From the IMG/VR virus record IMGVR_UViG_3300027996_002186, positions 248,001 through 312,000 of that record: a DNA stretch of 64,000 nt, one strand, 5' to 3'. The notes under the pieces were generated by a model. The model saw only the letters and a program-made list of their open reading frames with translations, was not told the DNA's origin and searched no databases. Shown piece after piece: positions 31,825-54,969 of this stretch; position 1 is the stretch's first letter; the number at the start of each line of letters is the position of its first letter. Made by a program: the position numbers and the translations under genes.

Positions 31825-32247
31825 ATGATGTATAAGATAGATAAACAACAAGCATATCATTCCTTTACGGTTATGCCCAAAGATTGTAATTTCAATAAAA
31901 GGGATAATGGCGGTAATGATACACTATTTGGAGGTAAGTTAATGTATGAGATGGATTATGCTGGTGCTAAAATAGCTAGAAGAGCTACTTATGGTATCGA
32001 TATTGACATGATAGTAACTGCTTCAACTGACAGGATTAACTTTGAGAAACCTGCCTTTATTGGTGATTTGGTAACTATGGAAGCCACTATTAAAGCTTAT
32101 GGTAAATCATCTATACAAATACGTATAAAGGTAAGGAGAGAAGATTTGAAAGGTGAGGTAGAACAAATTTGCTCAGCTAATATGACTTTTGTTACTATAA
32201 AAGGTGGTAAGCCGATAACTCATGGATTATGCTTTACTAAAAATTAA
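31825..32247 (+). CDS. Acyl-CoA thioesterase (hotdog fold, YciA-like)
   Basis: VMPKDCN, LFGGKLMYEMD, VTAS, INFEKPAFIGD, ANMTFV. Confidence 0.85.
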   Translation: MMYKIDKQQAYHSFTVMPKDCNFNKRDNGGNDTLFGGKLMYEMDYAGAKIARRATYGIDIDMIVTASTDRINFEKPAFIGDLVTMEATIKAYGKSSIQIRIKVRREDLKGEVEQICSANMTFVTIKGGKPITHGLCFTKN

Positions 32248-32254
32248 TATTAAT

Positions 32255-32524
32255 ATGAATTCAACTAGATTAGATTTAATTAAAGATGGTGATGTAGTTA
32301 TAATAGTTGGGAATAATCAACCATTTAAGGTTTTTAGTAAGAGTAGTTTGTCTAGGAAAGTTAAGGGTATTTGGTTATTAACAGGTGATGAAATTTTTTT
32401 AGATGGTGGAGAAGCTACATTACCAACAGACCAAGATTGGATACTATCATTAGTTGAGAAACTAGAAAATGATAAAATCGAAATTGATAAAAGAATCAAA
32501 TCTATAAAATCTATTGTTAATTAA
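32255..32524 (+). CDS. Small hypothetical protein with RxxS tag
   Basis: Start moved to 32255; ends RIKSIKSIVN. Confidence 0.6.
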   Translation: MNSTRLDLIKDGDVVIIVGNNQPFKVFSKSSLSRKVKGIWLLTGDEIFLDGGEATLPTDQDWILSLVEKLENDKIEIDKRIKSIKSIVN

Positions 32525-32637
32525 AACAATCAAAAATACCTATGAAAAAGGTATTAAAATTCACCAACATACCCTATTAAAAAATATAAAATATAGAATT
32601 AAATCTAAATTTGATTGGTGATCAACAATAAAAAACC

Positions 32638-32645
32638 TATATTTG
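32638..32645 (+). promoter_or_regulatory. TAnnTTTG promoter element
   Basis: TATATTTG 7 nt before leader-peptide ATG. Confidence 0.65.
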
Positions 32646-32652
32646 TAACATA

Positions 32653-32697
32653 ATGAAACATTTACACACATATAAAATTATGATTGACTGGGGTTAA
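32653..32697 (+). CDS. Putative hisS attenuator leader peptide MKHLHTYKIMIDWG
   Basis: 14 aa, His codons at 3 and 5; codons 11-14 form the antiterminator arm. Confidence 0.7.
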   Translation: MKHLHTYKIMIDWG

Positions 32698-32751
32698 TAC
32701 CAGCTACACATTATATATGTATAGCCTAGTCAATTTTGACTGGGTTTTTTT
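32683..32751 (+). promoter_or_regulatory. Attenuator: antiterminator/terminator switch
   Basis: ATTGACTGGG (32683-32692) pairs with CCTAGTCAAT (32725-32734), mutually exclusive with terminator CCTAGTCA/TGACTGGG (32725-32744) followed by T7. Confidence 0.75.
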
Positions 32752-32784
32752 ATGCAAAAAATAAATGATTAAAAAATTATAAAG

Positions 32785-33420
32785 ATGGAAATTAAAATTG
32801 ATAGTACTTACAAAGGAACAAGAATCCTTTTTGCGGAAACAGCTAAGAGTAAACGAGTTTTACTTAATGATATGATTGAAATACTTGAGTCTTATGGATA
32901 TCAAGAAATTATGATACCTATCATTCAAAAGCAAGAAACTTTCGAATTGAAGGTTGGTGATGAAAACCAAAATATGATGTATAACTTCAAAGACAGAGGT
33001 AACAGAGATTTATGTTTATCACCAGAATACACAGCAATTGTTCAACAATTAGCTTCTAATAGAATGAAATTTGACAAAGATGTTAAGATGTTCTACATAG
33101 GAGAATGTTTTCGTGGAGAGAATACGCAAAGGGGTAGATGGAGACAATTTACACAATTTGGTGTTGAAGTCTTGAATCCAAGTAAAGATTACTCAGACGA
33201 GATGGTTGAAATTGCTACTAAACTAATTCAATTAGTTACAAAAAATTATGAACTAAACACAGAAGCAACAAGAGGTCTAGATTACTATGATGGTGGAAAA
33301 GGATTCGAAATCGCTTGTCCTGAGTTGGGAGCCGCTAAACAAATTTGTGGAGGTGGGTCTTATAAAGGAGGAGTAGGGTTTGCAATAGGTGTGGATAGAT
33401 TACTATTATGCAACAAATAA
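32785..33420 (+). CDS. hisS: Minimal histidyl-tRNA synthetase catalytic domain
   Basis: LSPEYT, motif 2 FRGENTQRGRWRQFTQFGVE, RGLDYY, GGGSY, motif 3 GFAIGVDRL; only 211 aa, no anticodon domain. Confidence 0.85.
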   Translation: MEIKIDSTYKGTRILFAETAKSKRVLLNDMIEILESYGYQEIMIPIIQKQETFELKVGDENQNMMYNFKDRGNRDLCLSPEYTAIVQQLASNRMKFDKDVKMFYIGECFRGENTQRGRWRQFTQFGVEVLNPSKDYSDEMVEIATKLIQLVTKNYELNTEATRGLDYYDGGKGFEIACPELGAAKQICGGGSYKGGVGFAIGVDRLLLCNK

Positions 33421-33451
33421 GATATTTAAATTTTAATAAAGTAAGTGATAG

Positions 33452-33562
33452 ATGGGCATCGATGTAAAAATCACATTTAAGACTGTTAAAGAACAACGAA
33501 AGTTTATTAATAGTCATGAGACCATACTTTATTACCAACACTATATGTCCCTACACTCATAA
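33452..33562 (+). CDS. Possible 36 aa ORF
   Basis: MGIDVKITFKTVKEQRKFINSHETILYYQHYMSLHS; no recognised motif. Confidence 0.3.
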   Translation: MGIDVKITFKTVKEQRKFINSHETILYYQHYMSLHS

Positions 33563-33576
33563 ACTATGTATATTTT

Positions 33577-34950
33577 TTAATCTGTTGTTACTATCCACCC
33601 CTTTGTTATTAAATCATTCTTAGCCGTTACTCCATCATAACCACCAGAACTTCCATCTGGAGCTATATTTGATGATATGTTTATTTGTCTACCTGTGAAT
33701 CCAGCGGTACACCCATTATTAACATTAACTAAAAATTTATTAACTTCTACAACACCAAGTGAATTATCATGCACCTCATATCGGGCATTATTAACATCAC
33801 CCCATTGTGTGAATTTTTCAAACCCATTAAGAGCGGTTAAGCCACATCCATAATATTTTACTGATACAATTATCGCATTAGATCCAGTTGGAGCTGTTAC
33901 TTGGGTTAAGTTAGGGTTATTCCATCCATCTAAATATAATTGAGGACCTTCCCATAAGGTTAAATCTTTCATATCTAGATGTCCAACTAAATCACAATCA
34001 TTGAATCGGATTATATACCAAGTGCCTAATGTAGCTCCTGGTAGTGTAACAGTTTGTAACAACGGACAGTTTTGGCAATCTATCCAGAGTTGTACACTAT
34101 TTTGCCACCCAAGAACACTAAAATCAATTTCATTAACTGCTGTGTCGTATATACTCATCGTCCTCATTGTGGAAGTTCCATCAAAATAGATATTTTGTAT
34201 ATTACCTGTGGCTCCAGTTATACCAGTACCCTTTATATGAAATTGACTATTTAAATTTTGGTTTGTGAAATCAGCATCCCAGTTGTTCGCATCCCCAGCA
34301 CTTGGACCAACAGCCACTAAATCTGACCTCCAAAAAAACTGACCTCCTGAATCAGAATTAACATCATTTAATTTTATCCTATCAAAATTAACAGTACTAC
34401 CTAGTGTGTAAAGTGAATTAAAACCACCCCACTGAGTTGTATCAAATGTACTATCCGTAATACCTTGTATATTTATCGATCCACTATTACTTCGAAAGTA
34501 TAAACTTGTATTATTACCAAGAGGAGTAGATAAGTATTGTGTTGGCATAATTATAGAAGCTGTTGCTGTGCTAGGTAAATAAAATTTCCTCATATAATTA
34601 TAATTTGAGAAATCCAAAGTTCCCCAATCAACCCCACTTGGTGCACTAAATTGCCACCCACCGAAACTATTTATGGGATCTCTACCATATACCCTTATGG
34701 TATAACTACCAGTAACACCATAAGAATGTCCCAGGAATGGACTATCATCTATATTTTGTGTATCACTACCATCACCCCAATCAATTTCAAAAGTACCGTG
34801 ATAAAAATCGTAAGATTTGGCTCCTCCATAGTTTGTAAGCGCGGGGGTAAATGCACAATTATATGTTGTGGGTGGAGAAGTTACATTAATATTTATTTCG
34901 ATATAATCATTCTCATTCTTTTCTCTAAATTGTCTGCTAAGTCCTATCAT
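33577..34950 (-). CDS. Fibre-associated / receptor-binding protein with PKD-like and LRR-like repeats
   Basis: IDWGDG...HSYGVTGSYTI; repeated NxxLxxVxxP units. Confidence 0.6.
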   Translation of the reverse strand: MIGLSRQFREKNENDYIEININVTSPPTTYNCAFTPALTNYGGAKSYDFYHGTFEIDWGDGSDTQNIDDSPFLGHSYGVTGSYTIRVYGRDPINSFGGWQFSAPSGVDWGTLDFSNYNYMRKFYLPSTATASIIMPTQYLSTPLGNNTSLYFRSNSGSINIQGITDSTFDTTQWGGFNSLYTLGSTVNFDRIKLNDVNSDSGGQFFWRSDLVAVGPSAGDANNWDADFTNQNLNSQFHIKGTGITGATGNIQNIYFDGTSTMRTMSIYDTAVNEIDFSVLGWQNSVQLWIDCQNCPLLQTVTLPGATLGTWYIIRFNDCDLVGHLDMKDLTLWEGPQLYLDGWNNPNLTQVTAPTGSNAIIVSVKYYGCGLTALNGFEKFTQWGDVNNARYEVHDNSLGVVEVNKFLVNVNNGCTAGFTGRQINISSNIAPDGSSGGYDGVTAKNDLITKGWIVTTD

Positions 34951-34952
34951 AA

Positions 34953-36770
34953 TTATGTGAAATTTTTACCAAATGACGCATAATAATCAGTACCGTCATA
35001 TACCATAGTTACTAAATCTAAAGCGTTGTCGATACTAGTAGGTATTAATGAAACACCACTTTCCCATTTAATAGATGTTGGCCAATTTACAGTAGTTAAG
35101 TTAGATCCTTGTATTATTTTAATAGTATATGTTCCTCCAGTTTTTTGGTTTGAGAAACTAAATGTAACTCCTGTTGGAGCACTTTGGAAATCAACAACTT
35201 GTATATTACCATTATCCCAATCTATATTTTGTGAATTGGTTGATGGGCTTAATGTGACGGGTATATCAACATAAACTTGCCCAGTTATTTTAATATTCCC
35301 AACAACCTCTACCTTTTCAACTGGTGAGGCTGTACCAAATCCAGAAAATCCAGTTGATTCTGAAAAAACTACATCAGCCGATTCTGGTAAAATAGTTATG
35401 GTCTTTCCACTTCCACTATCTACGTCTAATATCATTCCATCCAGTCCCGAATTGGCCTTCATAACTAACATATTCTGGTATTTGGGTGATCCACCACTAG
35501 TTAAATATGTCGGAGAGAAATATGCAAATTGTCCATGAACTTTATTTGCTGGTGTTGTGAAATCACCAACGATAAACCTAGCAACAGCATTAGTACCAGA
35601 TGTGTCAGAATTATGTAACATATGTACGGTGTCTCCATCATGATCAAACCAAGTAACTGATCCCTGTGCAGTTCCACCAAGTGTTGTTATTGTATCTGAG
35701 TGTATTAAATAATCACCCGTTATATTAACATCACCAAAAACAGTTAACATATTATCAGCCGATGCTGTTCCTATACCAACACCAGTATCGTCCGATGATG
35801 CTAAAGAATCTGTTAATCCAGTTGCCGATGACCACTTAGGTATATAATTTGTTGTTCCTGTTCCAGAAATTCCCGAAGGTGTCTCCCAAGAACCAACACC
35901 ATCTCCAGCAACATCTGTTAGTACTTTACCAACCCCTTCATTACCATCAACCATTCTAATTGAACCACCAACGTGAAGTTGTTCTGTTGGTGTAAGTTCA
36001 CCAATTCCTACATTACCATCATTGGTGAGTAAAGCATAATTGTTATTACCGTTTATAGCATTGAAATATCCACCAACATTATTCCCAGCTGCGTGAGTTC
36101 CTTCTATTGAAACGAAATATCCATATACTGCATTTGCTCCCGACTTAGTAGTATTACTTAAAATTCTAGACCCATATATTGGATTCGTTGCATCAGCCTT
36201 TTGTTGTATGATGTAGTGAGCCGTATTGTGTGTCGTAGCCACTTGATAGAATTGATAGGAAGGAGTATTTCCTTGACCTATTGACCAACTTGCATCAACA
36301 TTCGTAGTTTTCAATCCTCCCGAACCTGAAAACTCTATATCAAATCCACTTGTGTTTACTATAATGTCAGATGGTAAAGCACCACTTCCTCCGTATATAC
36401 CAGTATTTTTTGAATCAACATAAGCAATTGAAGATACAGTTCCAAAATCAACCTCTAATTGGTTATTTGATTTTGTTAATCCAGAACCAGCTTCTGTTAT
36501 TATTGTAGATTCAGACCCAGATAAACCAGCTACCCAGTAATCTGTTGTTTCATTCCAAATTAATCTAGAATTTGTACTATTCCCCCTATTTATTTCTATA
36601 CCAGAATCCAATACAGGAGATCCAGAAAATGTAGCATTTAATGTTATTATATTATCAGATACATATAATTCTTCTACATTTAGAGAAGTTTGTGTTCCTG
36701 ATATAACCATATTCCCCAATACAGTTAAGTCTCCACCTAGTATTTCTGTATTACCGTATATTTTTGGCAT
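34953..36770 (-). CDS. Tail fibre protein
   Basis: Gly/Ser/Thr rich; GNVGIG.xP.E.L.V.G repeats; C-terminal DWDNGNIQ...IKW domain. Confidence 0.75.
   Translation of the reverse strand: MPKIYGNTEILGGDLTVLGNMVISGTQTSLNVEELYVSDNIITLNATFSGSPVLDSGIEINRGNSTNSRLIWNETTDYWVAGLSGSESTIITEAGSGLTKSNNQLEVDFGTVSSIAYVDSKNTGIYGGSGALPSDIIVNTSGFDIEFSGSGGLKTTNVDASWSIGQGNTPSYQFYQVATTHNTAHYIIQQKADATNPIYGSRILSNTTKSGANAVYGYFVSIEGTHAAGNNVGGYFNAINGNNNYALLTNDGNVGIGELTPTEQLHVGGSIRMVDGNEGVGKVLTDVAGDGVGSWETPSGISGTGTTNYIPKWSSATGLTDSLASSDDTGVGIGTASADNMLTVFGDVNITGDYLIHSDTITTLGGTAQGSVTWFDHDGDTVHMLHNSDTSGTNAVARFIVGDFTTPANKVHGQFAYFSPTYLTSGGSPKYQNMLVMKANSGLDGMILDVDSGSGKTITILPESADVVFSESTGFSGFGTASPVEKVEVVGNIKITGQVYVDIPVTLSPSTNSQNIDWDNGNIQVVDFQSAPTGVTFSFSNQKTGGTYTIKIIQGSNLTTVNWPTSIKWESGVSLIPTSIDNALDLVTMVYDGTDYYASFGKNFT
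36414..36680. repeat. Module shared between two fibre genes (copy 1)
   Basis: EELYVSDNIITLNAT...GLSGSESTIITEAGSGLTK...VDFGTVSSIAYVD; copy 2 at about 38658-38927. Confidence 0.85.
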
Positions 36771-36773
36771 CCC

Positions 36774-39700
36774 TTATATTATTATTGTTTTTATATTTGT
36801 TAGTGTTTGACTAATAGTTACATCAATAGATGCTGTTCCATTAATCTGAATTGTATCAGGTATAATTTGAAGTCCTGTTGAATCATATGTTTGTATAATT
36901 AAATCTTCTGTATTTAAATTGTGTATAATTGTTTCAGCTACACTAGCAGTGAAGTTTCTTATATCACTTACTTTGTTTATTATATCCGAAGTCAAGGCAA
37001 TAGTTCCTGACGCATCAGGTAGTCTCCAAGTTCTGTCTGCCATTAATACTGATGAACCTAACCTTCCACCAAATATAGTTCCGTTTGCTTGTATAAATTC
37101 AAACATTCTATCTGATGTTGTGCTATCAAGCCAAAATCCTGATGTCATTAATCCAATACCCCCACTAAACTCCATTTCATCACCAGTATCGTCTATTAGA
37201 ACCACACCAGCCGTATTACCTTCAATAATCAAAGAACCACTATCGTTGTATATATTATCTCCGACAAATTGTAGTTGATTAAGTCCCATTGCAATATTAC
37301 CACTCATCGTTCCACCAGCAAGAGGTAAGAAATCTCCAGTAGGATTACCAGAAACTAAAGCAACTGTACCTGTTGCGTCAGGCATTCCCCAACTCCTATC
37401 TGTTGTTGGTAAAGTCGATAGGTCTAAAGTATTCTCGATACCAGATAACGTAGCTCTAATCGTTCCGTCACTTGCATCCATGACCAGCGACCCAGGAGCC
37501 ATACCACTACCAGTTATAGTTATTTGAGGACCACTATCCGAAAAATCGTAGGTTTGACCATTCGCATCTATTGTTGTATTTTTATTAGACCGTATAGTTA
37601 ATACACCGGCCGGATTTGTAATATAACCAAGATTTCCTCCAAAGTCAATAGCAGTAGCTCCAGTAAGAGTTATCTCGTCTGCATAAATATCGTAACCTCC
37701 ATTGGTAATATCACCGCTCATTGTGCCACCAGCAAGTGGAAGATACGTTCCAGATAATGTACTAGGTGAGAATTTAACACCATCAAACAAAAGAGCTTGT
37801 CCGTTTGTTGCTGATGTTGGATCAATTTCAACTGAATTAACAGAGAATGAAGAACCAACGACATAAACACCATCAGTTGCTAATAAATCTAAGTTAGTAC
37901 TTGATAATGTAGTATCACCGCCAGATAAAATCTGTGTAGAACCTGTTCCAGAATCCAAACTAACAAAGTCACTTTCAACATCAAAAACAGATGATGTGAA
38001 TAGTAAATACCCAATATCACCTAGTGTAATATCATACCCATCAGAATTAATGGAAGTGTTTTGTGATAATGTACCACCTAATCCAATATAGTCAGACGTA
38101 ATAGATAAACCATTATTAACTTGAGCATCTAAAGTAACAACACCAGCAGTTCCACCACCAGTAAGTCCTTGACCACCTATAACTTCTGTTATATAATCGT
38201 TATTAATGTTATCAATTGCTATCCATAAAGAATTAGTAGCTGTGTCTAAATCAGATGATAAAGAAACTGTTCCGCTAATATTAGGCATTATCCAATCCCT
38301 ATTATCTGTTAATATAGAGCTTTTTATATCTCCGGTAAATGATCCACTAAGTCCAAATCTAAAACCAAATGTTCCACCAATCGCAAGGCTGGTGTTTGTG
38401 AATTCCATTTTATTAGTACCATCTTGTTCAAATCTAATTTGACCAGTAGAACCACCATCTAATACAACATCACCACCTGGTTTATTATTGTATAAAACAA
38501 CTTCATTACCGGCTGATTGGTATTGTAATCCAGAGTACGCATCAGTTGATAAGTTAATGTATGAATTATCTAATAGTTGAAGTGCTTCTCCAGATGATAA
38601 ATTAATAGAACCGGACATTGTTCCACCAGTAAGTGGTAAGTAATTACCAACTTGTGTATCTACATAAGTAATAGAAGATACAGTTCCAAAATCAACTGAT
38701 AGTTCGTTATTTGTTTTGGTTAAACCACTTCCTGCTTCTGTTATAATTGTAGATTCAGAACCCGAAAGTCCAAGAGCCCAATATTCAAGTGTTTCATCCC
38801 ATATTATGGATGATGATTGTGATGAACCTCTTAATACGTGAACACCAGCATCTAAGAATGGTGTTCCTGAACTATAAGTAGCATTTAATGTTATTATATT
38901 ATCAGCTACATATAATTCTTCTGTATTTACATAAGTTGCTGTTCCCGAAACAGTTAAATCACCAGATATAATTACAGAATCAGCAAATGTTCTATTACCA
39001 ACAACCGTATCTTTTAATCTTATTTGATTATTAGAATCAACTTCCAATGAATTTGAATTCAATTCTAATGTTATATCATCTACGGAAAAAGTAAGTCCTG
39101 AGTTTGTTTCTAGATTAACATCTAAAGTAACTACACCAGCAGTTCCACCACCAGTTAAACCAACACCACCTATAACTTCTGTTATATAATCATTGTTTAT
39201 ATTATCAATTGCTGTCCATAATGAAGATGTTCCACTATCGACATATAGTTTACTAACTAAAGAATTATTAACAAATGTTCCTGAGTAATCAGTTACATAA
39301 ACAAATCCTTGTAAATTACCAGTAAAAACACTTGCTGTATTAGCAGCATTAATTGATATATCAGTATCTAATGATATGTTTGTTGGTAAAAAAGGATCTG
39401 GTGATATATAAATTGAGTTTGGTGATCCGTTGTAATCTAGGTGTATTTCCGAACTACCATTTGAAGAAAGAATATTAGTACTGGTACCCATTATTATATT
39501 ATGAGTACCGGAATTATTATCAATTAATAAAACATCACTCAGTCCGGATGTATTAACATCAGAAGACCAATAAATATTTCCCAATCCATCACTTGTTAAT
39601 AATTGACCAGAAGAACCATCAATATTAGGTAATGTATAAGAATCATTTATATTAAGACTACCACCTATATAAACATAATTAGATTGTGATCCTGTTATAG

Positions 39701-40310
39701 ATTGTCCACCAATTATAACAGAGTTAACCACACCAGGACTCATCATTGAATTTCTAGTACCAACAAAAACAGCTTGTTTGTTATTATCACTAGTTGATGA
39801 TGTTGAACTACCATTATTTGATATTTTCAAATCATCGCGTGATAACAAACCAACACCTAATTTCAAATCACCCAATGTATTATATAATTCAATATTATCA
39901 GTTCCATCATGAAGCACTAAAGCTTGTGAATATCCATTAGCAAAAAGTGAATAATTTGAATCATCCATTAAAATACCATGTTCTCCTTGAGAAGCATTAT
40001 CAGTTGATATTAATATTGAATTTGTACTACCAGAATAATCTAAATCTATTCTACCTCCACCATTTGATGATAATATCGAAGTTGATGTTCCCATTATTAA
40101 GGGTACATTAGCAATGTTTGAGATACCCATAACTTCACTCAGAGAAGGGGTTAAACCTAATTCTGGACCACCACCAATTTCGGTGATAATTCCAAATTCA
40201 TCTTTTTGTTTTAATATACCATCTAAATCATAAGCCACAACTTTACCACCACTTGATGGAGTTGCCGCTGTTAACATATCTAAGGTACTGCCGAATATTA
40301 CTGATGCCAT
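36774..40310 (-). CDS. Long tail fibre protein
   Basis: 1178 aa; 3x [YF]LPL[AT]GGTMSG, 3x R.W.[ML]P..[ST]GT[VI].L; AATATATA at 40334-40341. Confidence 0.75.
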   Translation of the reverse strand: MASVIFGSTLDMLTAATPSSGGKVVAYDLDGILKQKDEFGIITEIGGGPELGLTPSLSEVMGISNIANVPLIMGTSTSILSSNGGGRIDLDYSGSTNSILISTDNASQGEHGILMDDSNYSLFANGYSQALVLHDGTDNIELYNTLGDLKLGVGLLSRDDLKISNNGSSTSSTSDNNKQAVFVGTRNSMMSPGVVNSVIIGGQSITGSQSNYVYIGGSLNINDSYTLPNIDGSSGQLLTSDGLGNIYWSSDVNTSGLSDVLLIDNNSGTHNIIMGTSTNILSSNGSSEIHLDYNGSPNSIYISPDPFLPTNISLDTDISINAANTASVFTGNLQGFVYVTDYSGTFVNNSLVSKLYVDSGTSSLWTAIDNINNDYITEVIGGVGLTGGGTAGVVTLDVNLETNSGLTFSVDDITLELNSNSLEVDSNNQIRLKDTVVGNRTFADSVIISGDLTVSGTATYVNTEELYVADNIITLNATYSSGTPFLDAGVHVLRGSSQSSSIIWDETLEYWALGLSGSESTIITEAGSGLTKTNNELSVDFGTVSSITYVDTQVGNYLPLTGGTMSGSINLSSGEALQLLDNSYINLSTDAYSGLQYQSAGNEVVLYNNKPGGDVVLDGGSTGQIRFEQDGTNKMEFTNTSLAIGGTFGFRFGLSGSFTGDIKSSILTDNRDWIMPNISGTVSLSSDLDTATNSLWIAIDNINNDYITEVIGGQGLTGGGTAGVVTLDAQVNNGLSITSDYIGLGGTLSQNTSINSDGYDITLGDIGYLLFTSSVFDVESDFVSLDSGTGSTQILSGGDTTLSSTNLDLLATDGVYVVGSSFSVNSVEIDPTSATNGQALLFDGVKFSPSTLSGTYLPLAGGTMSGDITNGGYDIYADEITLTGATAIDFGGNLGYITNPAGVLTIRSNKNTTIDANGQTYDFSDSGPQITITGSGMAPGSLVMDASDGTIRATLSGIENTLDLSTLPTTDRSWGMPDATGTVALVSGNPTGDFLPLAGGTMSGNIAMGLNQLQFVGDNIYNDSGSLIIEGNTAGVVLIDDTGDEMEFSGGIGLMTSGFWLDSTTSDRMFEFIQANGTIFGGRLGSSVLMADRTWRLPDASGTIALTSDIINKVSDIRNFTASVAETIIHNLNTEDLIIQTYDSTGLQIIPDTIQINGTASIDVTISQTLTNIKTIII
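38128..38227. repeat. ~100 bp internal direct repeat in fibre gene (copy 2 at 39121-39220)
   Basis: Both encode W.AIDNINNDYITEVIGG.GLTGGGTAGVVTLD. Confidence 0.9.
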
Positions 40311-43054: not shown

Positions 43055-43126
<72 letters not shown>

Positions 43127-43283
43127 CTAAAAGAGAAGAAATTCCCAAATAAATGAAAATAAATTTGGTTAGAAATAACTAAATGTTAAATAACTGGAGT
43201 TTTTTAATTTATTCTAAATATGTAATAATCTACTCTATGTAAATAATTTTCGGATTCAAATAGTTTATATGCTTTTAAGTATC

Positions 43284-50659: not shown

Positions 50660-52147
50660 ATGAAGAATATCATCACAAGGTTGGCGCCAAGTCCCACTTC
50701 AAATTTTTGTCATCTTGGAAATATCCGAACACTATTATATAACTACTTACTTGCTAAAAAGCATGGTGGTAAATTCCTTGTTAGACTAGAAGATACCGAT
50801 AGAGATAGATACACACCTGGATTTCTAAACTATTTCAGAGACACACTAGATTGGTTAGGAATTGTACCTGATTCTTCTTATTGGAATCCAGATACTTCAA
50901 TTGGATCATTCACACAATCAGAAAGAGATTATAGTGACAAAATCAATTATCTTATCGATAATGGTTATGCTTACTACGCTTTTGATACTAAAGACGATTT
51001 AGACAAAGCACATAAAAATATTCCGAATTTCAAATATGACGCGACTACTCGTATATCAATGAGAAATTCATTCACAATGTCAAAAGAGGATTTTGATAAA
51101 ACTATTAATGATAGAACACCTTATGTTATCAGGTTTGCTGTAACACCTGGAGTTGATATTACTTTCACTGATGCTATCTTAGGAGACATCACAATTAACA
51201 CTAATGTTGTTGATGATAAAGTGCTATTAAAGTCTAATGGTATTGGTTCTTATCACCTTTGTAATGTTAGTGACGACCACGATATGGGAGTAACTCACGT
51301 ACTTAGAGGACAAGAGTGGGTAAACTCAACACCTTTACACGTTTTACTTTACCAAGCTTTTGGTTGGGATGTGCCAACATTTGCACACTTACCACTAATT
51401 ATGAATCCTGATGGGAAAGGAAAATTATCTAAGAGAACATCTACTAGATATGGTATTCCAATCGCTCCACTTGGATATAATGATGGTGATGGTAACTACG
51501 TTAAGGGTTGGAAAGACTTAGGATATGATCCGAAATCATTTATGAATACATTAGCTCTAATTGGATGGAACCCTGGTAATGATGTTGAAATTATGTCAAT
51601 GGATGATATGATTAATAGTTTTACATTGGATAGAGTTCACAAATCAGGAGCTAGATTTGATATGGTTAAATCACAATGGATTAATTCACATTACTTGAAA
51701 CACACACCAAATTCTTGTTTACGTCCTTATATCACATTACCCGATGGTAGATATAATGTTGATAAAGTAGATATGATTATAACACTTGCTAAAGATAGAG
51801 TTGAATTCAAACAAGATTTGAATACGATTGTTGATTTATTCTTTGATAATCCAGTGATTACATCAACTAAGAAATTAGATAACAAATATAAATCTGCTAT
51901 GTCTGTTTTTGTTGATGAAATTGATTCAATTAGTTTTGATGATAACGATTCATTAAAAAAATCAATATTTGATATTTGCTCAAGTGTTGATGTTAAGATG
52001 GGTAAAGTGATGCCTGGATTAAGAATGGCTCTTATGGGTGGTGTCTCTGGTCCAGATTTAATAACAACGATGATAATTCTTGGTAAAGACCAAGTTAAAG
52101 ATAGAATTGCTAATTCGTTGATTTTTGAAAAAGCTATTTTATCATAA
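50660..52147 (+). CDS. gltX: Glutamyl-tRNA synthetase
   Basis: RLAPSPT..CHLGN (HIGH), RLEDTD, SYHL, DDHDMGVTHVLRGQEW, KLSKR, C-terminal anticodon domain LRMALMG..SGP. Confidence 0.95.
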   Translation: MKNIITRLAPSPTSNFCHLGNIRTLLYNYLLAKKHGGKFLVRLEDTDRDRYTPGFLNYFRDTLDWLGIVPDSSYWNPDTSIGSFTQSERDYSDKINYLIDNGYAYYAFDTKDDLDKAHKNIPNFKYDATTRISMRNSFTMSKEDFDKTINDRTPYVIRFAVTPGVDITFTDAILGDITINTNVVDDKVLLKSNGIGSYHLCNVSDDHDMGVTHVLRGQEWVNSTPLHVLLYQAFGWDVPTFAHLPLIMNPDGKGKLSKRTSTRYGIPIAPLGYNDGDGNYVKGWKDLGYDPKSFMNTLALIGWNPGNDVEIMSMDDMINSFTLDRVHKSGARFDMVKSQWINSHYLKHTPNSCLRPYITLPDGRYNVDKVDMIITLAKDRVEFKQDLNTIVDLFFDNPVITSTKKLDNKYKSAMSVFVDEIDSISFDDNDSLKKSIFDICSSVDVKMGKVMPGLRMALMGGVSGPDLITTMIILGKDQVKDRIANSLIFEKAILS

Positions 52148-52210: not shown

Positions 52211-52279
52211 GTAACTCGACCTGCCCATGGAAGATGGGGGTTTCGATTGGGGATTTCAATTGATTCTTCAAGTGAGTAT
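52211..52279 (+). promoter_or_regulatory. GC-rich structured 5' leader candidate
   Basis: TCG-ACC-tg-CCCAT-GGAAG-ATGGG-GGT-tt-CGA hairpin plus a weaker second hairpin, just after AATATATA (52194-52201). Confidence 0.35.
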
Positions 52280-52296
52280 AAAAAATAATCTAAACC

Positions 52297-52698
52297 ATGA
52301 AAAGTTTATTATTAATACTTGCCTTATTTATAGGATCATTTTCTTATTCACAAAGTGATAAAACCACTACAAAACTATCGTTTGATGAATGGATTAACAC
52401 AAAAAACAATATACCATCTGACATATTTGATGAAGAATGGTACGCATCATTAGATGAACCAATTAATTTCATAACTTATAGAAGAAGATGTGAAGTAACT
52501 ATACAATTTAGAATTTATAGAGGATTTGAAGAAACATATACCGTTGTTTTAACAAACAAAAATGGATTAGTAGTTTGGAAAGGTGAATTAAAACAAATTG
52601 ATGAGATCGATATTTCTTATTTATATAAAGGTATTTATACATTAACAGCTACCGATTCTGATGGTAATTCAATGGATAAAGAGGTTATTATTGGTTAG
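52297..52698 (+). CDS. Secreted protein with type IX secretion (T9SS type A) CTD-like C-terminus
   Basis: Signal peptide MKSLLLILALFIGSFSYS-Q; IDISYLYKGIYTL...KEVII. Confidence 0.6.
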   Translation: MKSLLLILALFIGSFSYSQSDKTTTKLSFDEWINTKNNIPSDIFDEEWYASLDEPINFITYRRRCEVTIQFRIYRGFEETYTVVLTNKNGLVVWKGELKQIDEIDISYLYKGIYTLTATDSDGNSMDKEVIIG

Positions 52699-52728: not shown

Positions 52729-54969
52729 TTATTCAAAGAGTGGGAATTTTGGAAGATACAATCTAGTAGTTGCGTTATCTGCAAATACTAAGTATTTAGA
52801 ATCGTCTCTAATAATATATTGATTTAATATCTTATTATGTACATTCTCTGGTATAACATCTAAGAACATTCTAATATTAGTAATCTTCATATCAGACGCT
52901 AATATCTCAGGATTGAAGTTTAATAATTCATATTCAATCGGTACTATTGTTTGAGTATCTTGATATAATTTTCTCAGAAGAGTATTTGGTAAACTAGGAG
53001 CATCTTCTTCAAAGTCAACATTTCTCTTATAAATATATTGTTCCATTTTTCTATTTCTCTGATCAATATTAAGAACATAACAGTGCCAAGTTTCCTCTTC
53101 TAATCCTGTTGGATCAGCACCAGTTGTATATGGTGTTAAGTTGAATACATACGTATCTGAGTTAAGTGTTATTGTTATTGTATCATTTAATAACTCAGCT
53201 TTCCAACCAAGTGAAGTCGTTGTATCATAATGAGTCATGAAATTATAAATTTCATCTTGTATGTAATTATTTATATTAAACCAAACTTGGAATCCAATAT
53301 TATCAGATACTTTGAAAATAGGATCAAGATTCTTATATGAAACAGCAGAGTTTCTATAATTGATAGATGATAAGTCATAATGAGCCTTAGCTATAATTGT
53401 TGAAGAATTCTCAACAAGTTCTTTATCTATTTGTGCGTTATATTCTAATCTAATTGGATCTCTTGTTAAAGGAGTAAATTGTTGCTTATTAGCAACTGCT
53501 GCTTTATCCTTAGTTTGTTCGATACCCATTAATTCATCAATTGTAGTATTCTTAGTAAGCTTATCAAGTTTATTTTGTATATCAATAGTACCAGCTTGGA
53601 TATTTGCTTTCTGAGTGTATTTTTTCAGAATCAATTTATAGTAAACTGCTGAGTTATTGAAATTTCTAAACTGTTGTGCGTGATCTACTTGATACATTCT
53701 ATTCACCTCACAGAAATAAAGAAAGTCTTCTTTAGATGGTCTCCTTTGAACACCAAAGATTTCCTTAAATTGTTGTTTGGTTATATGTGCTTCCATTGTT
53801 TCAAACAGATTCAAGTCAAATTGATTCATAACAATTTGACTATCCGGGAAATTATTACCTTCTATTGAAATTTTAATTTCTCCCTCACAAACAACATTAA
53901 ATAATTGATATTCATTTAATGTGTGATCTTGTCCTTTCTTATCAGGATCAGTAACAAAATAAAGAATCTTATGACCGAATACTTGTTCAGCATCTTTACT
54001 TAATTTTGTTAATAAATTAACAGCCGTATTTTGTTGATATGGGTTATATAAATTTGCCTTTTCTTGATCAGTCATAGGTGCGTTAACACCATCAACATCA
54101 CATTTATCACCTGCGCCAGAATTTAGATTCTCATTAGGTATGAAATTACCATCAGCATCAAATATTCCATTCATATTAGACAAACAACATTCTCTTATAC
54201 CAAATAAATTACTTTTTTTCGAATCATTTGTTACATTTTGAAAGTCACCGATTAAATTAATATCTTGTATAGTAACTAATTGACCAGAATTATTTGTAAT
54301 AGAATATTCGATTTGGAAAAACCTTATAGGATTTATATCAGTAGTTGATATATTTTCTTTTGTTAAAGGTTCCCAACTGGACCAAGTTCTTGAACTATCT
54401 TGTGAATATCTATATTCTAATGTTAAACCATCAGGTAACCCACTTTGGTGTGATATTGATATTATTTCTAAATCTGTTATTTTAAATATTTTAAAAATAA
54501 AAGGAGGTTTTATTATTTTTGTTTCACCAGTTGGTATAGAAACAATATCACTATTTTCAATAGGTCTTTCTAATTCACCTTGTAATTCATATTCTAATAT
54601 TCTAATATTATCTAATGTAGATATTCCTTCCCTAATCCATTTTATATCTACATATAATGGATCAAGTGAATCTATAACCGGAAAATTATCAATAAACCTT
54701 TTTAAAACTAACCACTCAGACCAAGATATACCATCTCTAGATACTCTATAATATTGTGATAAAAATCTTTCATCAGATAATCCTAAAGTATCATATTGAA
54801 ATTTGGTAAATTCAGTAACATTTTGTAAATTAGTAAAACTAATAACATACTCATCTCCTGGTTCATAAAAGTAAGGAGTGAAATCACTCGAACCAGTAGC
54901 CGCGTTTATATCGAATTTGTCGGAAATGGTAATAGTACCATCATTAAGGTTTGTAACTACATCATACAT
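52729..54969 (-). CDS. T4 gp14-like neck/head-closure protein with added N- and C-terminal beta domains
   Basis: LYNPY, FGHKILYF, RPSKEDFLYF, RMYQVD, YYKLILKKY parallel gp14; AATATATA at 54975-54982. Confidence 0.65.
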   Translation of the reverse strand: MYDVVTNLNDGTITISDKFDINAATGSSDFTPYFYEPGDEYVISFTNLQNVTEFTKFQYDTLGLSDERFLSQYYRVSRDGISWSEWLVLKRFIDNFPVIDSLDPLYVDIKWIREGISTLDNIRILEYELQGELERPIENSDIVSIPTGETKIIKPPFIFKIFKITDLEIISISHQSGLPDGLTLEYRYSQDSSRTWSSWEPLTKENISTTDINPIRFFQIEYSITNNSGQLVTIQDINLIGDFQNVTNDSKKSNLFGIRECCLSNMNGIFDADGNFIPNENLNSGAGDKCDVDGVNAPMTDQEKANLYNPYQQNTAVNLLTKLSKDAEQVFGHKILYFVTDPDKKGQDHTLNEYQLFNVVCEGEIKISIEGNNFPDSQIVMNQFDLNLFETMEAHITKQQFKEIFGVQRRPSKEDFLYFCEVNRMYQVDHAQQFRNFNNSAVYYKLILKKYTQKANIQAGTIDIQNKLDKLTKNTTIDELMGIEQTKDKAAVANKQQFTPLTRDPIRLEYNAQIDKELVENSSTIIAKAHYDLSSINYRNSAVSYKNLDPIFKVSDNIGFQVWFNINNYIQDEIYNFMTHYDTTTSLGWKAELLNDTITITLNSDTYVFNLTPYTTGADPTGLEEETWHCYVLNIDQRNRKMEQYIYKRNVDFEEDAPSLPNTLLRKLYQDTQTIVPIEYELLNFNPEILASDMKITNIRMFLDVIPENVHNKILNQYIIRDDSKYLVFADNATTRLYLPKFPLFE

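What the first reader, a model, noticed from the sequence alone, without database searches (positions are those of the whole stretch)
52297..52698. Phage protein apparently addressed to the host type IX secretion system
Seen: Sec signal ending before Gln, about 45 aa of passenger, then an Ig-like tail with IDISxLxKGIYxL and a terminal KxII. Established: T9SS type A CTDs have this pattern, and Bacteroidota signal peptides often expose a +1 Gln. Inference: a near CTD-only decoy that jams or exploits T9SS (gliding, surface receptors, superinfection exclusion).
Basis: partly seen in the sequence, partly recalled or inferred. Interest (0 to 1): 0.6.

Follow-up and report, generated by a model that had tools for sequence, protein, structure and literature searches.

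The report
Cargo-less T9SS sorting-domain protein of a megaphage
A giant marine phage of Bacteroidota encodes a small exported protein that is almost only the address tag of the host's type IX secretion system, preceded by an unusually conserved leader, so the phage probably uses or interferes with that secretion route.

Summary
The ORF at 52297-52698 (+) is real: 133 aa, under purifying selection (dN/dS 0.13-0.30). It keeps the same position, between a GluRS gene and a 746-aa gene, in related huge phages.

It has a Sec signal peptide with an invariant S-x-S|Q cleavage site, a variable linker of 7-25 aa, a conserved 11-aa motif, and a 79-aa C-terminal beta-sandwich.

The window protein scores below the curated cut-offs for the T9SS type A sorting domain (PF18962 22.8 < 27 bits; TIGR04183 19.7 < 23). 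A family profile settles the homology. All 30 single-stretch matches lie at the extreme C-terminus of their proteins. Every relative I scanned passes PF18962. The best structural matches are solved T9SS CTDs.

The same phage carries further type A and type B CTD genes.

So "addressed to T9SS" is well supported by homology. "Decoy that jams T9SS" is untested, and the phage's own T9SS cargo argues against wholesale jamming.

New here: a roughly 60-nt leader element (52214-52277) is invariant across deeply diverged loci. It sits at a fixed distance upstream of mini-CTD genes and of other secreted phage proteins. The gene looks like the head and tail of a mosaic class of phage cargo genes.

Verdict: a new variant of a known kind, of moderate to high interest.

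The parts
52214..52277 (+). Conserved 5' leader element. It has a 4-bp closing helix (ACTC/GAGT), an invariant hairpin (core 52218-52240), a variable optional hairpin (7 bp in the window) and a conserved TTCTTCAAG stretch. The ATG follows after an A-rich tail.
   Evidence: Invariant in 5 syntenic loci whose proteins are 41-84% identical. Single copy in the window, in G000 and in the 483-kb genome. Found 39-58 nt upstream of signal-peptide ORFs in the metagenomic loci that have room for an ORF. 99.3% of cells are paired against 34-59% in slid controls, and 3 closing-helix pairs show compensatory changes. No Rfam match. Folding energy is no better than shuffles.
52297..52350 (+). Sec signal peptide, residues 1-18; predicted cleavage S-Y-S|Q exposes Gln19.
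   Evidence: S16, S18 and Q19 are invariant. No Cys, so it is not a lipoprotein. Q-rule: PMC5837995.
52351..52425 (+). Variable linker, residues 19-43 (7-25 aa in homologues, rich in T, D, N and S). This is the only true 'passenger'.
   Evidence: Alignment A1. A 9-nt direct repeat at 52381 and 52426 suggests a partial duplication of the following motif.
52426..52458 (+). Conserved pre-CTD motif, residues 44-54 (F-D-E-E-W-Y-A-S-L-D-E), predicted as a short helix. W48 is invariant across the whole small family.
   Evidence: The same motif precedes the CTD of the 1425-aa protein P0026. Generic bacterial CTDs start matching the family profile only after it.
52459..52695 (+). T9SS type A C-terminal sorting domain homologue, residues 55-133. 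Seven predicted beta strands, the subfamily motif R-I-Y-R-G, a G-x-Y motif, and Lys128 five residues from the end.
52696..52698 (+). Stop codon (TAG). The gene converges on the 746-aa ORF of the minus strand.
50660..52147 (+). Upstream syntenic neighbour: glutamyl/glutaminyl-tRNA synthetase-like gene (495 aa).
   Evidence: PF00749 at 4.9e-70, PF19269. Synteny.
52729..54969 (-). Downstream syntenic neighbour: 746-aa protein with no family match.
   Evidence: Synteny.

Best explanation
The gene encodes a phage-made, Sec-exported, cargo-less substrate of the host type IX secretion system.

After signal peptidase I exposes Gln19, the mature protein of about 115 aa has three parts. These are a short variable linker, an 11-aa conserved pre-CTD helix, and a 79-aa type A C-terminal sorting domain. 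This is the same head (leader plus signal peptide) and tail (pre-CTD motif plus CTD) that flank passengers of hundreds of residues in related phage genes.

Because nothing else is left, its activity must lie in what a type A CTD does: dock into the PorV/SprA translocon site and move on towards PorU.

Shown here: homology, fold, architecture, purifying selection, conserved synteny, phage origin, and co-occurrence with other phage T9SS-type genes.

Inferred: that it is really routed through T9SS (my estimate about 0.65).

Inferred, weaker (about 0.3): that its job is to occupy or mask T9SS components. That would alter the display of T9SS-dependent surface proteins on the infected cell, for example as receptor masking or superinfection exclusion.

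Expression appears to be governed by a unique, extremely conserved 5' leader.
For: Homology
- PF18962 is hit by all 12 close homologues.
- The family profile, searched against 1.84 billion proteins, gave 30 single-stretch matches. All 30 lie at the extreme C-terminus of proteins of 79-1892 aa.
- In all 10 larger proteins scanned, that stretch is a PF18962 domain scoring 35.7-54.9 bits. Six distant small relatives also pass the cut-off.
- Distant small relatives keep the canonical F/Y-P-N-P motif.
- A wider family profile hits 65 places in one Flavobacterium genome.

Fold
- The AF2 model has pLDDT 89.4, with one helix and 7 strands.
- The top Foldseek hit is the NucA CTD bound in the translocon, 8glk_D, TM 0.81.
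- VIA-align ranks the mirolase CTD first at Z 10.2 (rmsd 1.9 A over 74 residues). The PorZ, NucA and RemZ CTDs score Z 9.3-9.6.
- Lys128 corresponds to the near-invariant C-proximal Lys that contacts PorV (PMC10994853).

Gene reality and context
- dN/dS is 0.13-0.30.
- Synteny is conserved down to 41% protein identity.
- The same phage has a G8 + type A CTD gene above the TIGR04183 cut-off and a type B CTD gene.
- The leader R1 precedes mini-CTD genes and the 1425-aa PKD_6/SprB/CTD protein P0026.

Background from the literature
- Model type A substrates bind the purified PorV complex without energy; energy is needed to extract substrates (PMC10994853).
- All type A CTDs use the PorV shuttle (PMC12618676).
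- T9SS and gliding-motility mutations confer phage resistance in Flavobacterium (10.1101/2020.10.02.323337; PMC9804748).
Against: - The window protein itself is below both curated cut-offs (22.8 < 27 bits; 19.7 < 23 bits).
- Its clade has lost the P-N-P motif of the first strand (T-Y-R-R-R-C instead).
- Generic beta-sandwiches score nearly as high in structure searches (Z 8-9.9).
- There is no experimental evidence of secretion.
- The host is unknown.
- The phage exports its own CTD cargo, so a general block of T9SS would be self-defeating.
- The strong conservation of the pre-CTD motif is not required by a pure translocon-plug model.
- Small CTD-only proteins also exist in bacteria, e.g. a 130-aa ORF in Leptobacterium flavescens and small Bacteroidota clusters. 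The architecture is therefore not a phage invention, and it may have a housekeeping role that is still unknown.
Confidence: 0.55

Rival explanations
1. Peptide delivery. The CTD is only the vehicle. After PorU-type cleavage, the short N-terminal piece is the product. That piece runs from pyroGlu19 to about residue 54 and is only about 14-36 aa across the family. It would be either released or anchored to the cell surface, acting as a surface mark or a signal.
For: The pre-CTD motif, with W48 invariant, is the most conserved part of the whole small family. It lies outside the region matched by generic CTDs. Relatives carry D-T-T triplets in the linker, which fit the Bacteroidetes O-glycosylation sequon as I recall it. 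Cleaved cargo is attached to A-LPS in P. gingivalis (PMC7712824).
Against: The same motif precedes the CTD in the 1425-aa P0026, and in weaker form in other long proteins. It therefore looks like part of this CTD subtype rather than a cargo. The rest of the linker is not conserved in length or sequence. The CTD itself is under strong constraint beyond what a mere vehicle would need (82% mean column identity).
Confidence: 0.15
2. PorA-like regulator. The CTD acts in the periplasm as a ligand of a host sensor, as the PorA CTD binds PorY in P. gingivalis. The phage would use it to tune expression of T9SS genes, for example to boost export of its own cargo.
For: There is a precedent for a CTD with a dual role as secretion signal and PorY ligand, dependent on basic residues and on the last strand (PMC12152298). 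The window clade carries a basic R-R-R / K-R-R patch where P-N-P normally sits. Co-occurrence with phage T9SS cargo genes fits an activator better than a blocker.
Against: PorA is 246 aa with a FimH-like N-terminal domain (PMC7712824), which this protein lacks. No sequence relationship to PorA was seen. The basic patch is not conserved in the wider small family. The presence of a PorXY-type pathway in the unknown host was not tested.
Confidence: 0.08
3. Not a T9SS substrate. This would be a periplasmic or outer-membrane-associated beta-sandwich that descends from a CTD but has been exapted for another job. One example would be binding another envelope protein used as a receptor, in the manner of small superinfection-exclusion proteins.
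For: Scores are sub-threshold and the P-N-P motif is lost in this clade. The C-terminal end I-I-G is invariant here but unusual among the relatives. The small beta-sandwich fold is generic.
Against: The C-proximal Lys, the G-x-Y motif and the extreme C-terminal position are kept. Syntenic orthologues with intact CTD scores (P0013 at 32.2 bits, P0017 at 38.6 bits) occupy the same locus. The leader is shared with a bona fide long CTD protein.
Confidence: 0.15
4. Functionless remnant. The gene would be what is left after deletion of the passenger from a larger phage cargo gene.
For: Head and tail are homologous to those of larger genes such as P0026.
Against: dN/dS is 0.13-0.30. The frame is intact in all homologues. 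The gene is retained in the same locus down to 41% identity and in unrelated phage contigs. The nearest Atlas cluster has 67 members, mostly viral.
Confidence: 0.03

Closest known systems
T9SS type A C-terminal sorting domain (Pfam PF18962 Por_Secre_tail / TIGR04183) of Bacteroidota cargo proteins
   Same: Homologous domain at the extreme C-terminus behind a Sec signal. It has a seven-strand beta-sandwich, a G-x-Y motif and a Lys near the end. The nearest solved structures are the CTDs of mirolase, PorZ, NucA, RemZ and RemA.
   Different: There is virtually no passenger. The gene is phage-encoded. The window protein scores below the curated cut-offs and has lost the P-N-P motif. It carries a subtype-specific R-I-Y-R-G motif and a conserved pre-CTD helix.
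Phage-encoded T9SS cargo proteins of 'Cryophage' (Bellas et al. 2020, PMC7468147)
   Same: Phage genes with T9SS type A sorting domains, presumed to hijack the host system. They are variable between phage variants.
   Different: Those carry enzymatic or PA14 passengers (an endoglucanase, a GH39 enzyme, a PA14 protein). This one has none, is syntenically fixed in a megaphage lineage, and has a dedicated conserved leader.
PorA (PGN_0123) of Porphyromonas gingivalis
   Same: A small T9SS cargo whose CTD itself has a function beyond sorting: it binds PorV and the sensor PorY (PMC7712824, PMC12152298).
   Different: PorA is 246 aa with a 144-residue FimH-like domain. No sequence kinship was detected. 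It is a host regulator, not a phage gene.
Small 'T9SS type A sorting domain-containing' ORFs of Bacteroidota genomes (e.g. the 130-aa ORF of Leptobacterium flavescens, L033:1495-1887)
   Same: Signal peptide with Gln at +1, an acidic linker of about 45 aa, then a CTD. Atlas clusters of 132-142 aa from Bacteroidota carry PF18962.
   Different: These are uncharacterised. They lack the pre-CTD motif, the R-I-Y-R-G subtype and the leader. No close relative of the phage family was found in 185,579 species genomes.
Small phage proteins that disable a host surface machine used as a receptor (e.g. Aqs1 of phage DMS3 against type IV pili, PMC13436744; T5 Llp, from my own knowledge)
   Same: The proposed logic is the same: a small phage protein targets an envelope machine whose products serve as phage receptors.
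   Different: This is an analogy only. Aqs1 is cytoplasmic and Llp is a lipoprotein. Neither mimics a secretion signal. No phenotype is known here.

Membership tests
T9SS type A CTD (PF18962 / TIGR04183) | HMM score at or above the curated cut-off for the protein itself | tested here: not met
   PF18962 gives 22.8 bits against a cut-off of 27 (E 1.2e-4), with residues 77-131 aligned to profile positions 18-74. TIGR04183 gives 19.7 bits against a cut-off of 23.
T9SS type A CTD (PF18962 / TIGR04183) | Demonstrable homology to accepted members (transitive, by family profile) | tested here: met
   The profile of 11 family members matches C-terminal stretches that are PF18962 domains of 35.7-54.9 bits in 10 of 10 larger proteins scanned. 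Six small relatives scanned pass the cut-off at 27.4-48.6 bits; among them, P0013 and P0017 sit in the same locus.
T9SS type A CTD (PF18962 / TIGR04183) | Domain sits at the extreme C-terminus of a protein with an N-terminal Sec signal peptide | tested here: met
   The domain ends at the last residue. The signal peptide is clear by inspection, with an invariant S-x-S|Q site. No dedicated predictor was run.
T9SS type A CTD (PF18962 / TIGR04183) | Compact seven-strand (3+4) Ig-like beta-sandwich (PMC11285876) | tested here: met
   The AF2 model has pLDDT 89.4 with 7 strands after one helix. CTDs give the best Foldseek and VIA matches, but generic sandwiches are within 1-2 Z units.
T9SS type A CTD (PF18962 / TIGR04183) | Near-invariant, functionally important Lys close to the C-terminus (PMC10994853) | tested here: met
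   K128 lies five residues from the end and is invariant in the 12 close homologues. It is replaced by Gln in some distant small relatives.
T9SS type A CTD (PF18962 / TIGR04183) | P-N-P motif in the first strand | tested here: not met
   The window clade has T-Y-R-R-R-C at that position. Distant family members and related long proteins keep F/Y-P-N-P.
T9SS type A CTD (PF18962 / TIGR04183) | T9SS-dependent secretion, PorV binding and CTD removal | not testable with these tools
   The complex prediction with a PorV from Leptobacterium flavescens gave no verdict. That is not evidence either way.
T9SS type A CTD (PF18962 / TIGR04183) | Host possesses a T9SS | tested here: inconclusive
   The host is unknown. 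Relatives above 634 kb are predicted to infect Bacteroidetes (PMC7162821). The same phage encodes other type A and type B CTD proteins and Q-rule signal peptides.
PorA-type regulatory cargo | FimH-like N-terminal domain plus a CTD that binds PorY | tested here: not met
   There is no N-terminal domain; only 25 variable residues precede the pre-CTD motif. PorA is 246 aa. PorY binding is not testable here.
SprB repeat (PF13573) | Match to the 37-residue repeat model | tested here: not met
   The last 30 or so profile positions cross-match SprB repeats in giant adhesins. PF13573 is not among the Pfam hits of the protein even at E <= 10. This is a resemblance of one hairpin only.
Superinfection-exclusion lipoproteins (Llp/Cor type) | Lipobox with Cys at +1 | tested here: not met
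   There is no Cys in or after the signal peptide. The only Cys is C65, inside the domain.

The most novel reading that the evidence does not exclude
Huge phages of Bacteroidota may carry a dedicated, leader-controlled module of T9SS-addressed genes. In this reading, a structured 5' RNA element, riboswitch- or attenuator-like and unknown to Rfam, gates expression of a mosaic gene class: leader, then Q-rule signal peptide, then an exchangeable passenger, then a sorting tail. The passenger-less member in this window would be a substrate mimic. It would occupy or mask PorV/SprA and so reshape the infected cell's T9SS-dependent surface, excluding competing phages.
Probability: 0.2. Interest if true: 0.8.

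Novelty: new variant of a known kind. Interest (0 to 1): 0.6.

Why it matters
T9SS builds the surface coat, the gliding adhesins and the secreted enzymes of Bacteroidota. In Flavobacterium, mutations in it confer phage resistance. Phage-encoded T9SS cargo has been reported once, with enzymatic passengers.

A conserved phage family that consists of little more than the sorting signal would be a natural tool. It could show what a bare CTD does to the translocon, the PorV shuttle and the PorU sortase. It would also be a candidate for a new type of phage interference with, or exploitation of, a host secretion system.

The invariant leader gives a second handle that can be tested independently: a possible new cis-regulatory element specific to secreted phage proteins.

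Both are directly testable in genetically tractable Flavobacteriia.

Tried and rejected
- Complex prediction of residues 44-133 with the PorV of Leptobacterium flavescens gave no verdict (score 0.00, controls not run). It is not evidence for or against binding.
- PHROGs has no family for the protein.
- A PDB sequence-profile search gave only a weak hit to the NucA CTD (E 0.52).
- The first AF2 model, built from 12 sequences, was poor (pLDDT 67). It was replaced by the domain model.
- The search for related loci with the wide alignment A3 failed because it has no conserved 7-10 column stretch.
- With the close alignment, IMG/VR yielded only one further viral contig, carrying an identical copy.
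- No close relative turned up in 185,579 bacterial and archaeal species genomes. The related long-protein CTD subtype gave only 25-29% matches there.
- For the leader: there is no Rfam family at E <= 10 beyond noise, and there are no further copies in the 483-kb genome.
- The leader core was not found in 401 genomes of the class around G004 at two mismatches or fewer.
- Minimum free energies are no better than shuffled sequences (z from -0.54 to +0.94). RNA structure is therefore not established, and a DNA-level operator remains possible.
- A terminator reading of the hairpin is unlikely to be the whole story. The element travels with the downstream gene in loci that lack the GluRS gene.
- The contexts of P0054 and P0022 were too short to say whether they are phage or bacterial.
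- A 299-nt contig inside the ORF is present in a metatranscriptome library. DNA carry-over cannot be excluded, so it is not counted as proof of expression.
- I rejected the lipoprotein, spanin and virion Ig-decoration readings. The protein has no lipobox and does have a cleavable signal peptide.

Full report
**1. The observation**

The window holds an ORF at 52297-52698 on the + strand encoding 133 aa.

- The N-terminus is a textbook Sec signal: M-K, then an 11-residue hydrophobic core, then S-F-S-Y-S followed by Gln19.
- Residues 104-116 read I-D-I-S-Y-L-Y-K-G-I-Y-T-L.
- The protein ends K-E-V-I-I-G.

An upstream ATG at 52227 is out of frame here. It is in frame only in one relative, so M1 at 52297 is the start.

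**2. Where the window comes from**

- The window is part of an IMG/VR virus record of 312,709 b.
- An identical copy of the gene lies in a 483,262-b viral contig rated 98% complete.
- The region is 81% identical in nucleotides to LR745206, one of the 634-735 kb 'huge phage' genomes. Those are predicted to replicate in Bacteroidetes (PMC7162821).
- Neighbouring genes include a Glu/Gln-tRNA synthetase, an NAD-dependent DNA ligase, an M28 peptidase, and weak virion and tail-fibre matches.
- The DNA is found in 18 marine, seawater or brine runs from 15 studies. The host is therefore probably a marine member of Bacteroidota, not necessarily Flavobacterium.

**3. Is it a real gene?**

The word search found eleven homologues of 106-133 aa.

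- The alignment shows invariant S16, S18 and Q19.
- The linker varies in both length (7-25 aa) and sequence.
- From residue 44 to the end the block is strongly conserved, with 82% mean column identity.
- Pairwise dN/dS over that block is 0.13-0.30.
- The gene keeps its place (GluRS, then this gene, then a convergent protein of about 747 aa, then an M28 peptidase) in contigs whose copy is only 41% identical.
- It evolves faster than its neighbours: 64% against 82-84% identity, and 41% against 52-67%. That is common for genes facing the host surface.

**4. Is the tail a T9SS sorting domain?**

The protein itself is sub-threshold:

- PF18962 gives 22.8 bits against a cut-off of 27.
- TIGR04183 gives 19.7 bits against a cut-off of 23.
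- The match starts only at profile position 18.

Because the family scans left this open, I used the large profile search once. The query was the family trimmed of its signal peptide (alignment A2). It returned 111 proteins in two kinds.

- The first kind comprised 30 single-stretch, whole-profile matches. Every one lies at the extreme C-terminus of its protein, and those proteins range from 79 to 1892 aa.
- The second kind were multi-stretch matches of only the last 30 or so profile positions to SprB repeats in giant adhesins. That is a resemblance of one hairpin (G-x-Y-x-x-T-x-T-D), not domain homology.

Pfam scans confirmed the first kind.

- In ten of ten larger proteins, the matched C-terminal stretch is a PF18962 domain of 35.7-54.9 bits.
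- Six more distant small relatives pass the cut-off at 27.4-48.6 bits.
- Those relatives show F/Y-P-N-P exactly where the window clade has T-Y-R-R-R-C. This explains the truncated, sub-threshold match.
- A wider profile (A5) hits 65 places in a single Flavobacterium genome. Those matches start at profile position 12-19, which sets the CTD proper at residues 55-133.

**5. Fold**

With the 22-sequence domain alignment, AlphaFold2 gives pLDDT 89.4. The model has a short helix (residues 46-52) followed by seven strands. This is the architecture described for CTDs (PMC11285876).

- Foldseek's best hit is the NucA CTD caught in the F. johnsoniae translocon (8glk_D, TM 0.81 on the target, rmsd 2.7 A). 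The RemZ, RemA and RgpB CTDs are also listed.
- VIA-align ranks the mirolase CTD first (Z 10.2, rmsd 1.9 A over 74 residues).
- PorZ, NucA and RemZ follow at Z 9.3-9.6. Generic sandwiches reach Z 8-9.9, so the fold alone would not be decisive.
- Lys128 matches the near-invariant Lys that touches PorV in all substrate-translocon structures (PMC10994853).

**6. There is no passenger**

Residues 44-54 (F-D-E-E-W-Y-A-S-L-D-E) are conserved across the whole small family, and W48 is invariant.

The same motif (V-F-D-N-E-W-R-E-S-I) precedes the same CTD subtype in P0026, a 1425-aa PKD_6/SprB-repeat protein. Weaker versions precede it in other long proteins.

The motif is therefore part of an extended CTD subtype, marked also by R-I-Y-R-G. 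What remains as 'cargo' is a 7-25 aa T/D/N-rich linker.

**7. The phage has more T9SS-type genes**

Outside the window, the same genome encodes:

- a 323-aa protein with a G8 domain and a canonical CTD ending K-K-I-I-I-K, scoring 25 bits on TIGR04183 against a cut-off of 23;
- a 197-aa protein with a signal ending L-S-A|Q, a PKD-like domain and a type B CTD (CHU_C, 52.5 bits);
- an adjacent 185-aa PKD-like protein with the same S-Y-S-Q signal end;
- a SprB-repeat ORF.

The 483-kb contig has three PF18962 matches and LR745206 has two.

Phage-encoded T9SS cargo has been described once before, with enzyme passengers (PMC7468147). Q-rule signal peptides have been noted in Porphyromonas phages (PMC10367356).

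**8. An unexpected leader**

The intergenic DNA upstream of the gene contains a block that is invariant in five syntenic loci. It spans 52215-52244, with a second block at 52261-52277. The proteins of those loci have diverged to 41-84% identity and their synonymous sites are saturated.

- It is single copy in the window, in G000 and in the whole 483-kb genome.
- It has no Rfam match.
- It was not found in 401 bacterial genomes of the class sampled.

An exact-core scan of metagenomes found 17 loci. In all 15 with room for an ORF, a signal-peptide ORF with Gln at +1 starts 39-58 nt downstream.

- Six of these ORFs are mini-CTD proteins, including members only 28% identical.
- Nine are Cys-rich secreted proteins of 486-676 aa with a different tail, and they lie in loci without the GluRS, 746-aa or M28 neighbours.

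A covariance model built from 16 distinct leaders found the element in two further places:

- directly upstream of the mini-CTD gene P0042, in an unrelated phage-like contig;
- directly upstream of P0026.

The N-terminal domain of P0026 is in turn homologous to the 676-aa leader-associated protein.

The proposed fold has these parts:

- a 4-bp closing helix;
- an invariant bulged hairpin;
- an optional variable hairpin;
- a possible loop-to-C-U-U-C pseudoknot.

Evidence for and against that fold:

- It pairs 99.3% of cells, against 34-59% for slid controls.
- Three closing-helix pairs show compensatory changes.
- The variable hairpin is 7 bp in the window, has a different sequence in others and is absent in two.
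- Folding energies are not better than shuffles.
- The hairpin is invariant, partly because the metagenome scan required it.

I therefore rate this as a strongly conserved leader of unknown mode (RNA structure likely, DNA operator possible).

The picture that emerges is a mosaic class of phage genes: leader, then signal peptide, then an exchangeable passenger, then a tail. The window gene is the member with no passenger.

**9. Mechanism**

Established background:

- Type A CTDs are recognised by PorV and bind a plastic pocket formed by PorV and SprA.
- Loading needs no energy, whereas extraction does.
- Model type A substrates bind purified complexes in vitro (PMC10994853; PMC12618676).

A bare, abundant CTD would therefore be expected to dock there. 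Whether it then passes through and is cleaved, lingers, or acts in the periplasm cannot be told from sequence.

I favour engagement of the T9SS as the activity. The most likely consequence is modulation or masking, for these reasons:

- No other functional part exists.
- The domain is more constrained than a mere vehicle needs to be.
- T9SS-dependent surface structures matter for phage susceptibility in Flavobacterium (10.1101/2020.10.02.323337; PMC9804748).

The phage's own cargo genes argue against a general jam. They keep the PorA-like activator idea (PMC12152298) and the peptide-delivery idea alive.

Small CTD-only ORFs also exist in bacteria, uncharacterised. The architecture as such is therefore not new.

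**10. Other notes**

- A metatranscriptome library from one of the studies that hold the phage contains a 299-nt contig identical to 52379-52677, inside the ORF. It also has short contigs in the GluRS gene. DNA carry-over cannot be excluded.
- No alternative genetic code was needed.
- No step had to be referred.

**11. Verdict**

- The 'addressed to T9SS' reading is supported by homology, fold and genomic company.
- The 'decoy' function is a reasonable but untested inference.
- The finding is a new variant of a known kind: phage T9SS cargo reduced to the sorting domain.
- It comes with an additional, possibly novel, conserved leader element.

Noticed in passing
window 52214-52277 (+); also L009:7921-7984, L011:2270-2332, and L037-L053: A leader element that is invariant across loci with 41-84% protein identity and single copy per phage genome. 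It lies 39-58 nt upstream of signal-peptide ORFs of several unrelated kinds. It has no Rfam match and was not found in 401 Bacteroidia-class genomes. The closing helix shows compensatory changes, but folding energy is not significant.
   Followed up: yes
G000:C1:88357-91602 (L002:1495-2466, minus strand), outside the window: A 323-aa phage protein with a signal peptide, a G8 domain (PF10162, 3.9e-9), an Fn3-like middle part and a canonical type A CTD above the TIGR04183 cut-off. It is a conventional phage-encoded T9SS cargo.
   Followed up: partly
G000:C1:15930-19181 (L014), outside the window: A cluster of secreted-protein genes. It holds a 197-aa protein with a PKD-like domain and a type B CTD (CHU_C, 52.5 bits), an adjacent 185-aa PKD-like protein whose signal ends S-Y-S-Q as in the studied gene, and a SprB-repeat ORF.
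   Followed up: partly
L037, L038, L041, L043, L046, L047, L050, L052, L053 (metagenomic loci): Leader-associated Cys-rich secreted proteins of 486-676 aa. Only a CUB hit and a weak Ig_3 hit appear in two of the five scanned. They share an Fn3-like domain (L-P-I-E-L-L ... Y-Y-R-L-x-Q-x-D-x-D-G) with the phage G8-CTD protein. They end in a short tail (K-R-I-I-K-like) that resembles the last strands of a CTD but is not detected by PF18962.
   Followed up: partly
L011:2348-6625 (P0026): A 1425-aa PKD_6/SprB-repeat/type A CTD protein. It has the same leader, the same pre-CTD motif and the same CTD subtype as the mini-CTD gene. It sits among many tiny ORFs, so giant adhesin-like T9SS cargo may itself be phage-encoded.
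   Followed up: partly
window 52381-52389 and 52426-52434: A 9-nt direct repeat (TTTGATGAA) encodes F-D-E twice. The linker insertion specific to this phage (S-F-D-E-W-I-N-T) looks like a degenerate duplicate of the pre-CTD motif. Relatives instead carry repeated D-T-T triplets in the linker, which fit the Bacteroidetes O-glycosylation sequon as I recall it.
   Followed up: partly
window 50660-52147 (+) and 43055-43127 (+): The phage encodes a Glu/Gln-tRNA synthetase-like gene. Relatives also carry a class II Asp/Asn-type synthetase nearby. There is also a tRNA-Met gene. This is typical translation-related cargo of huge phages.
   Followed up: no
window 32001-40000: GC content rises to 0.335-0.338 against about 0.27-0.30 elsewhere. 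The rise spans large minus-strand ORFs, among them a 1178-aa ORF with a weak virion structural match and a 605-aa ORF with a weak tail-fibre match.
   Followed up: no
G000 versus G001 (IMGVR_UViG_3300027996_002186): The window's record is 312,709 b and rated 91% complete. Yet an identical copy of the gene sits in a 483,262-b contig rated 98% complete, and relatives reach 634 kb. The completeness estimate for the window's record is probably too high.
   Followed up: no
window 52379-52677: A 299-nt contig identical to this stretch, lying inside the ORF, is present in a marine metatranscriptome library. That library is from the same study as DNA runs holding the phage. It is suggestive of expression but not proof.
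   Followed up: partly
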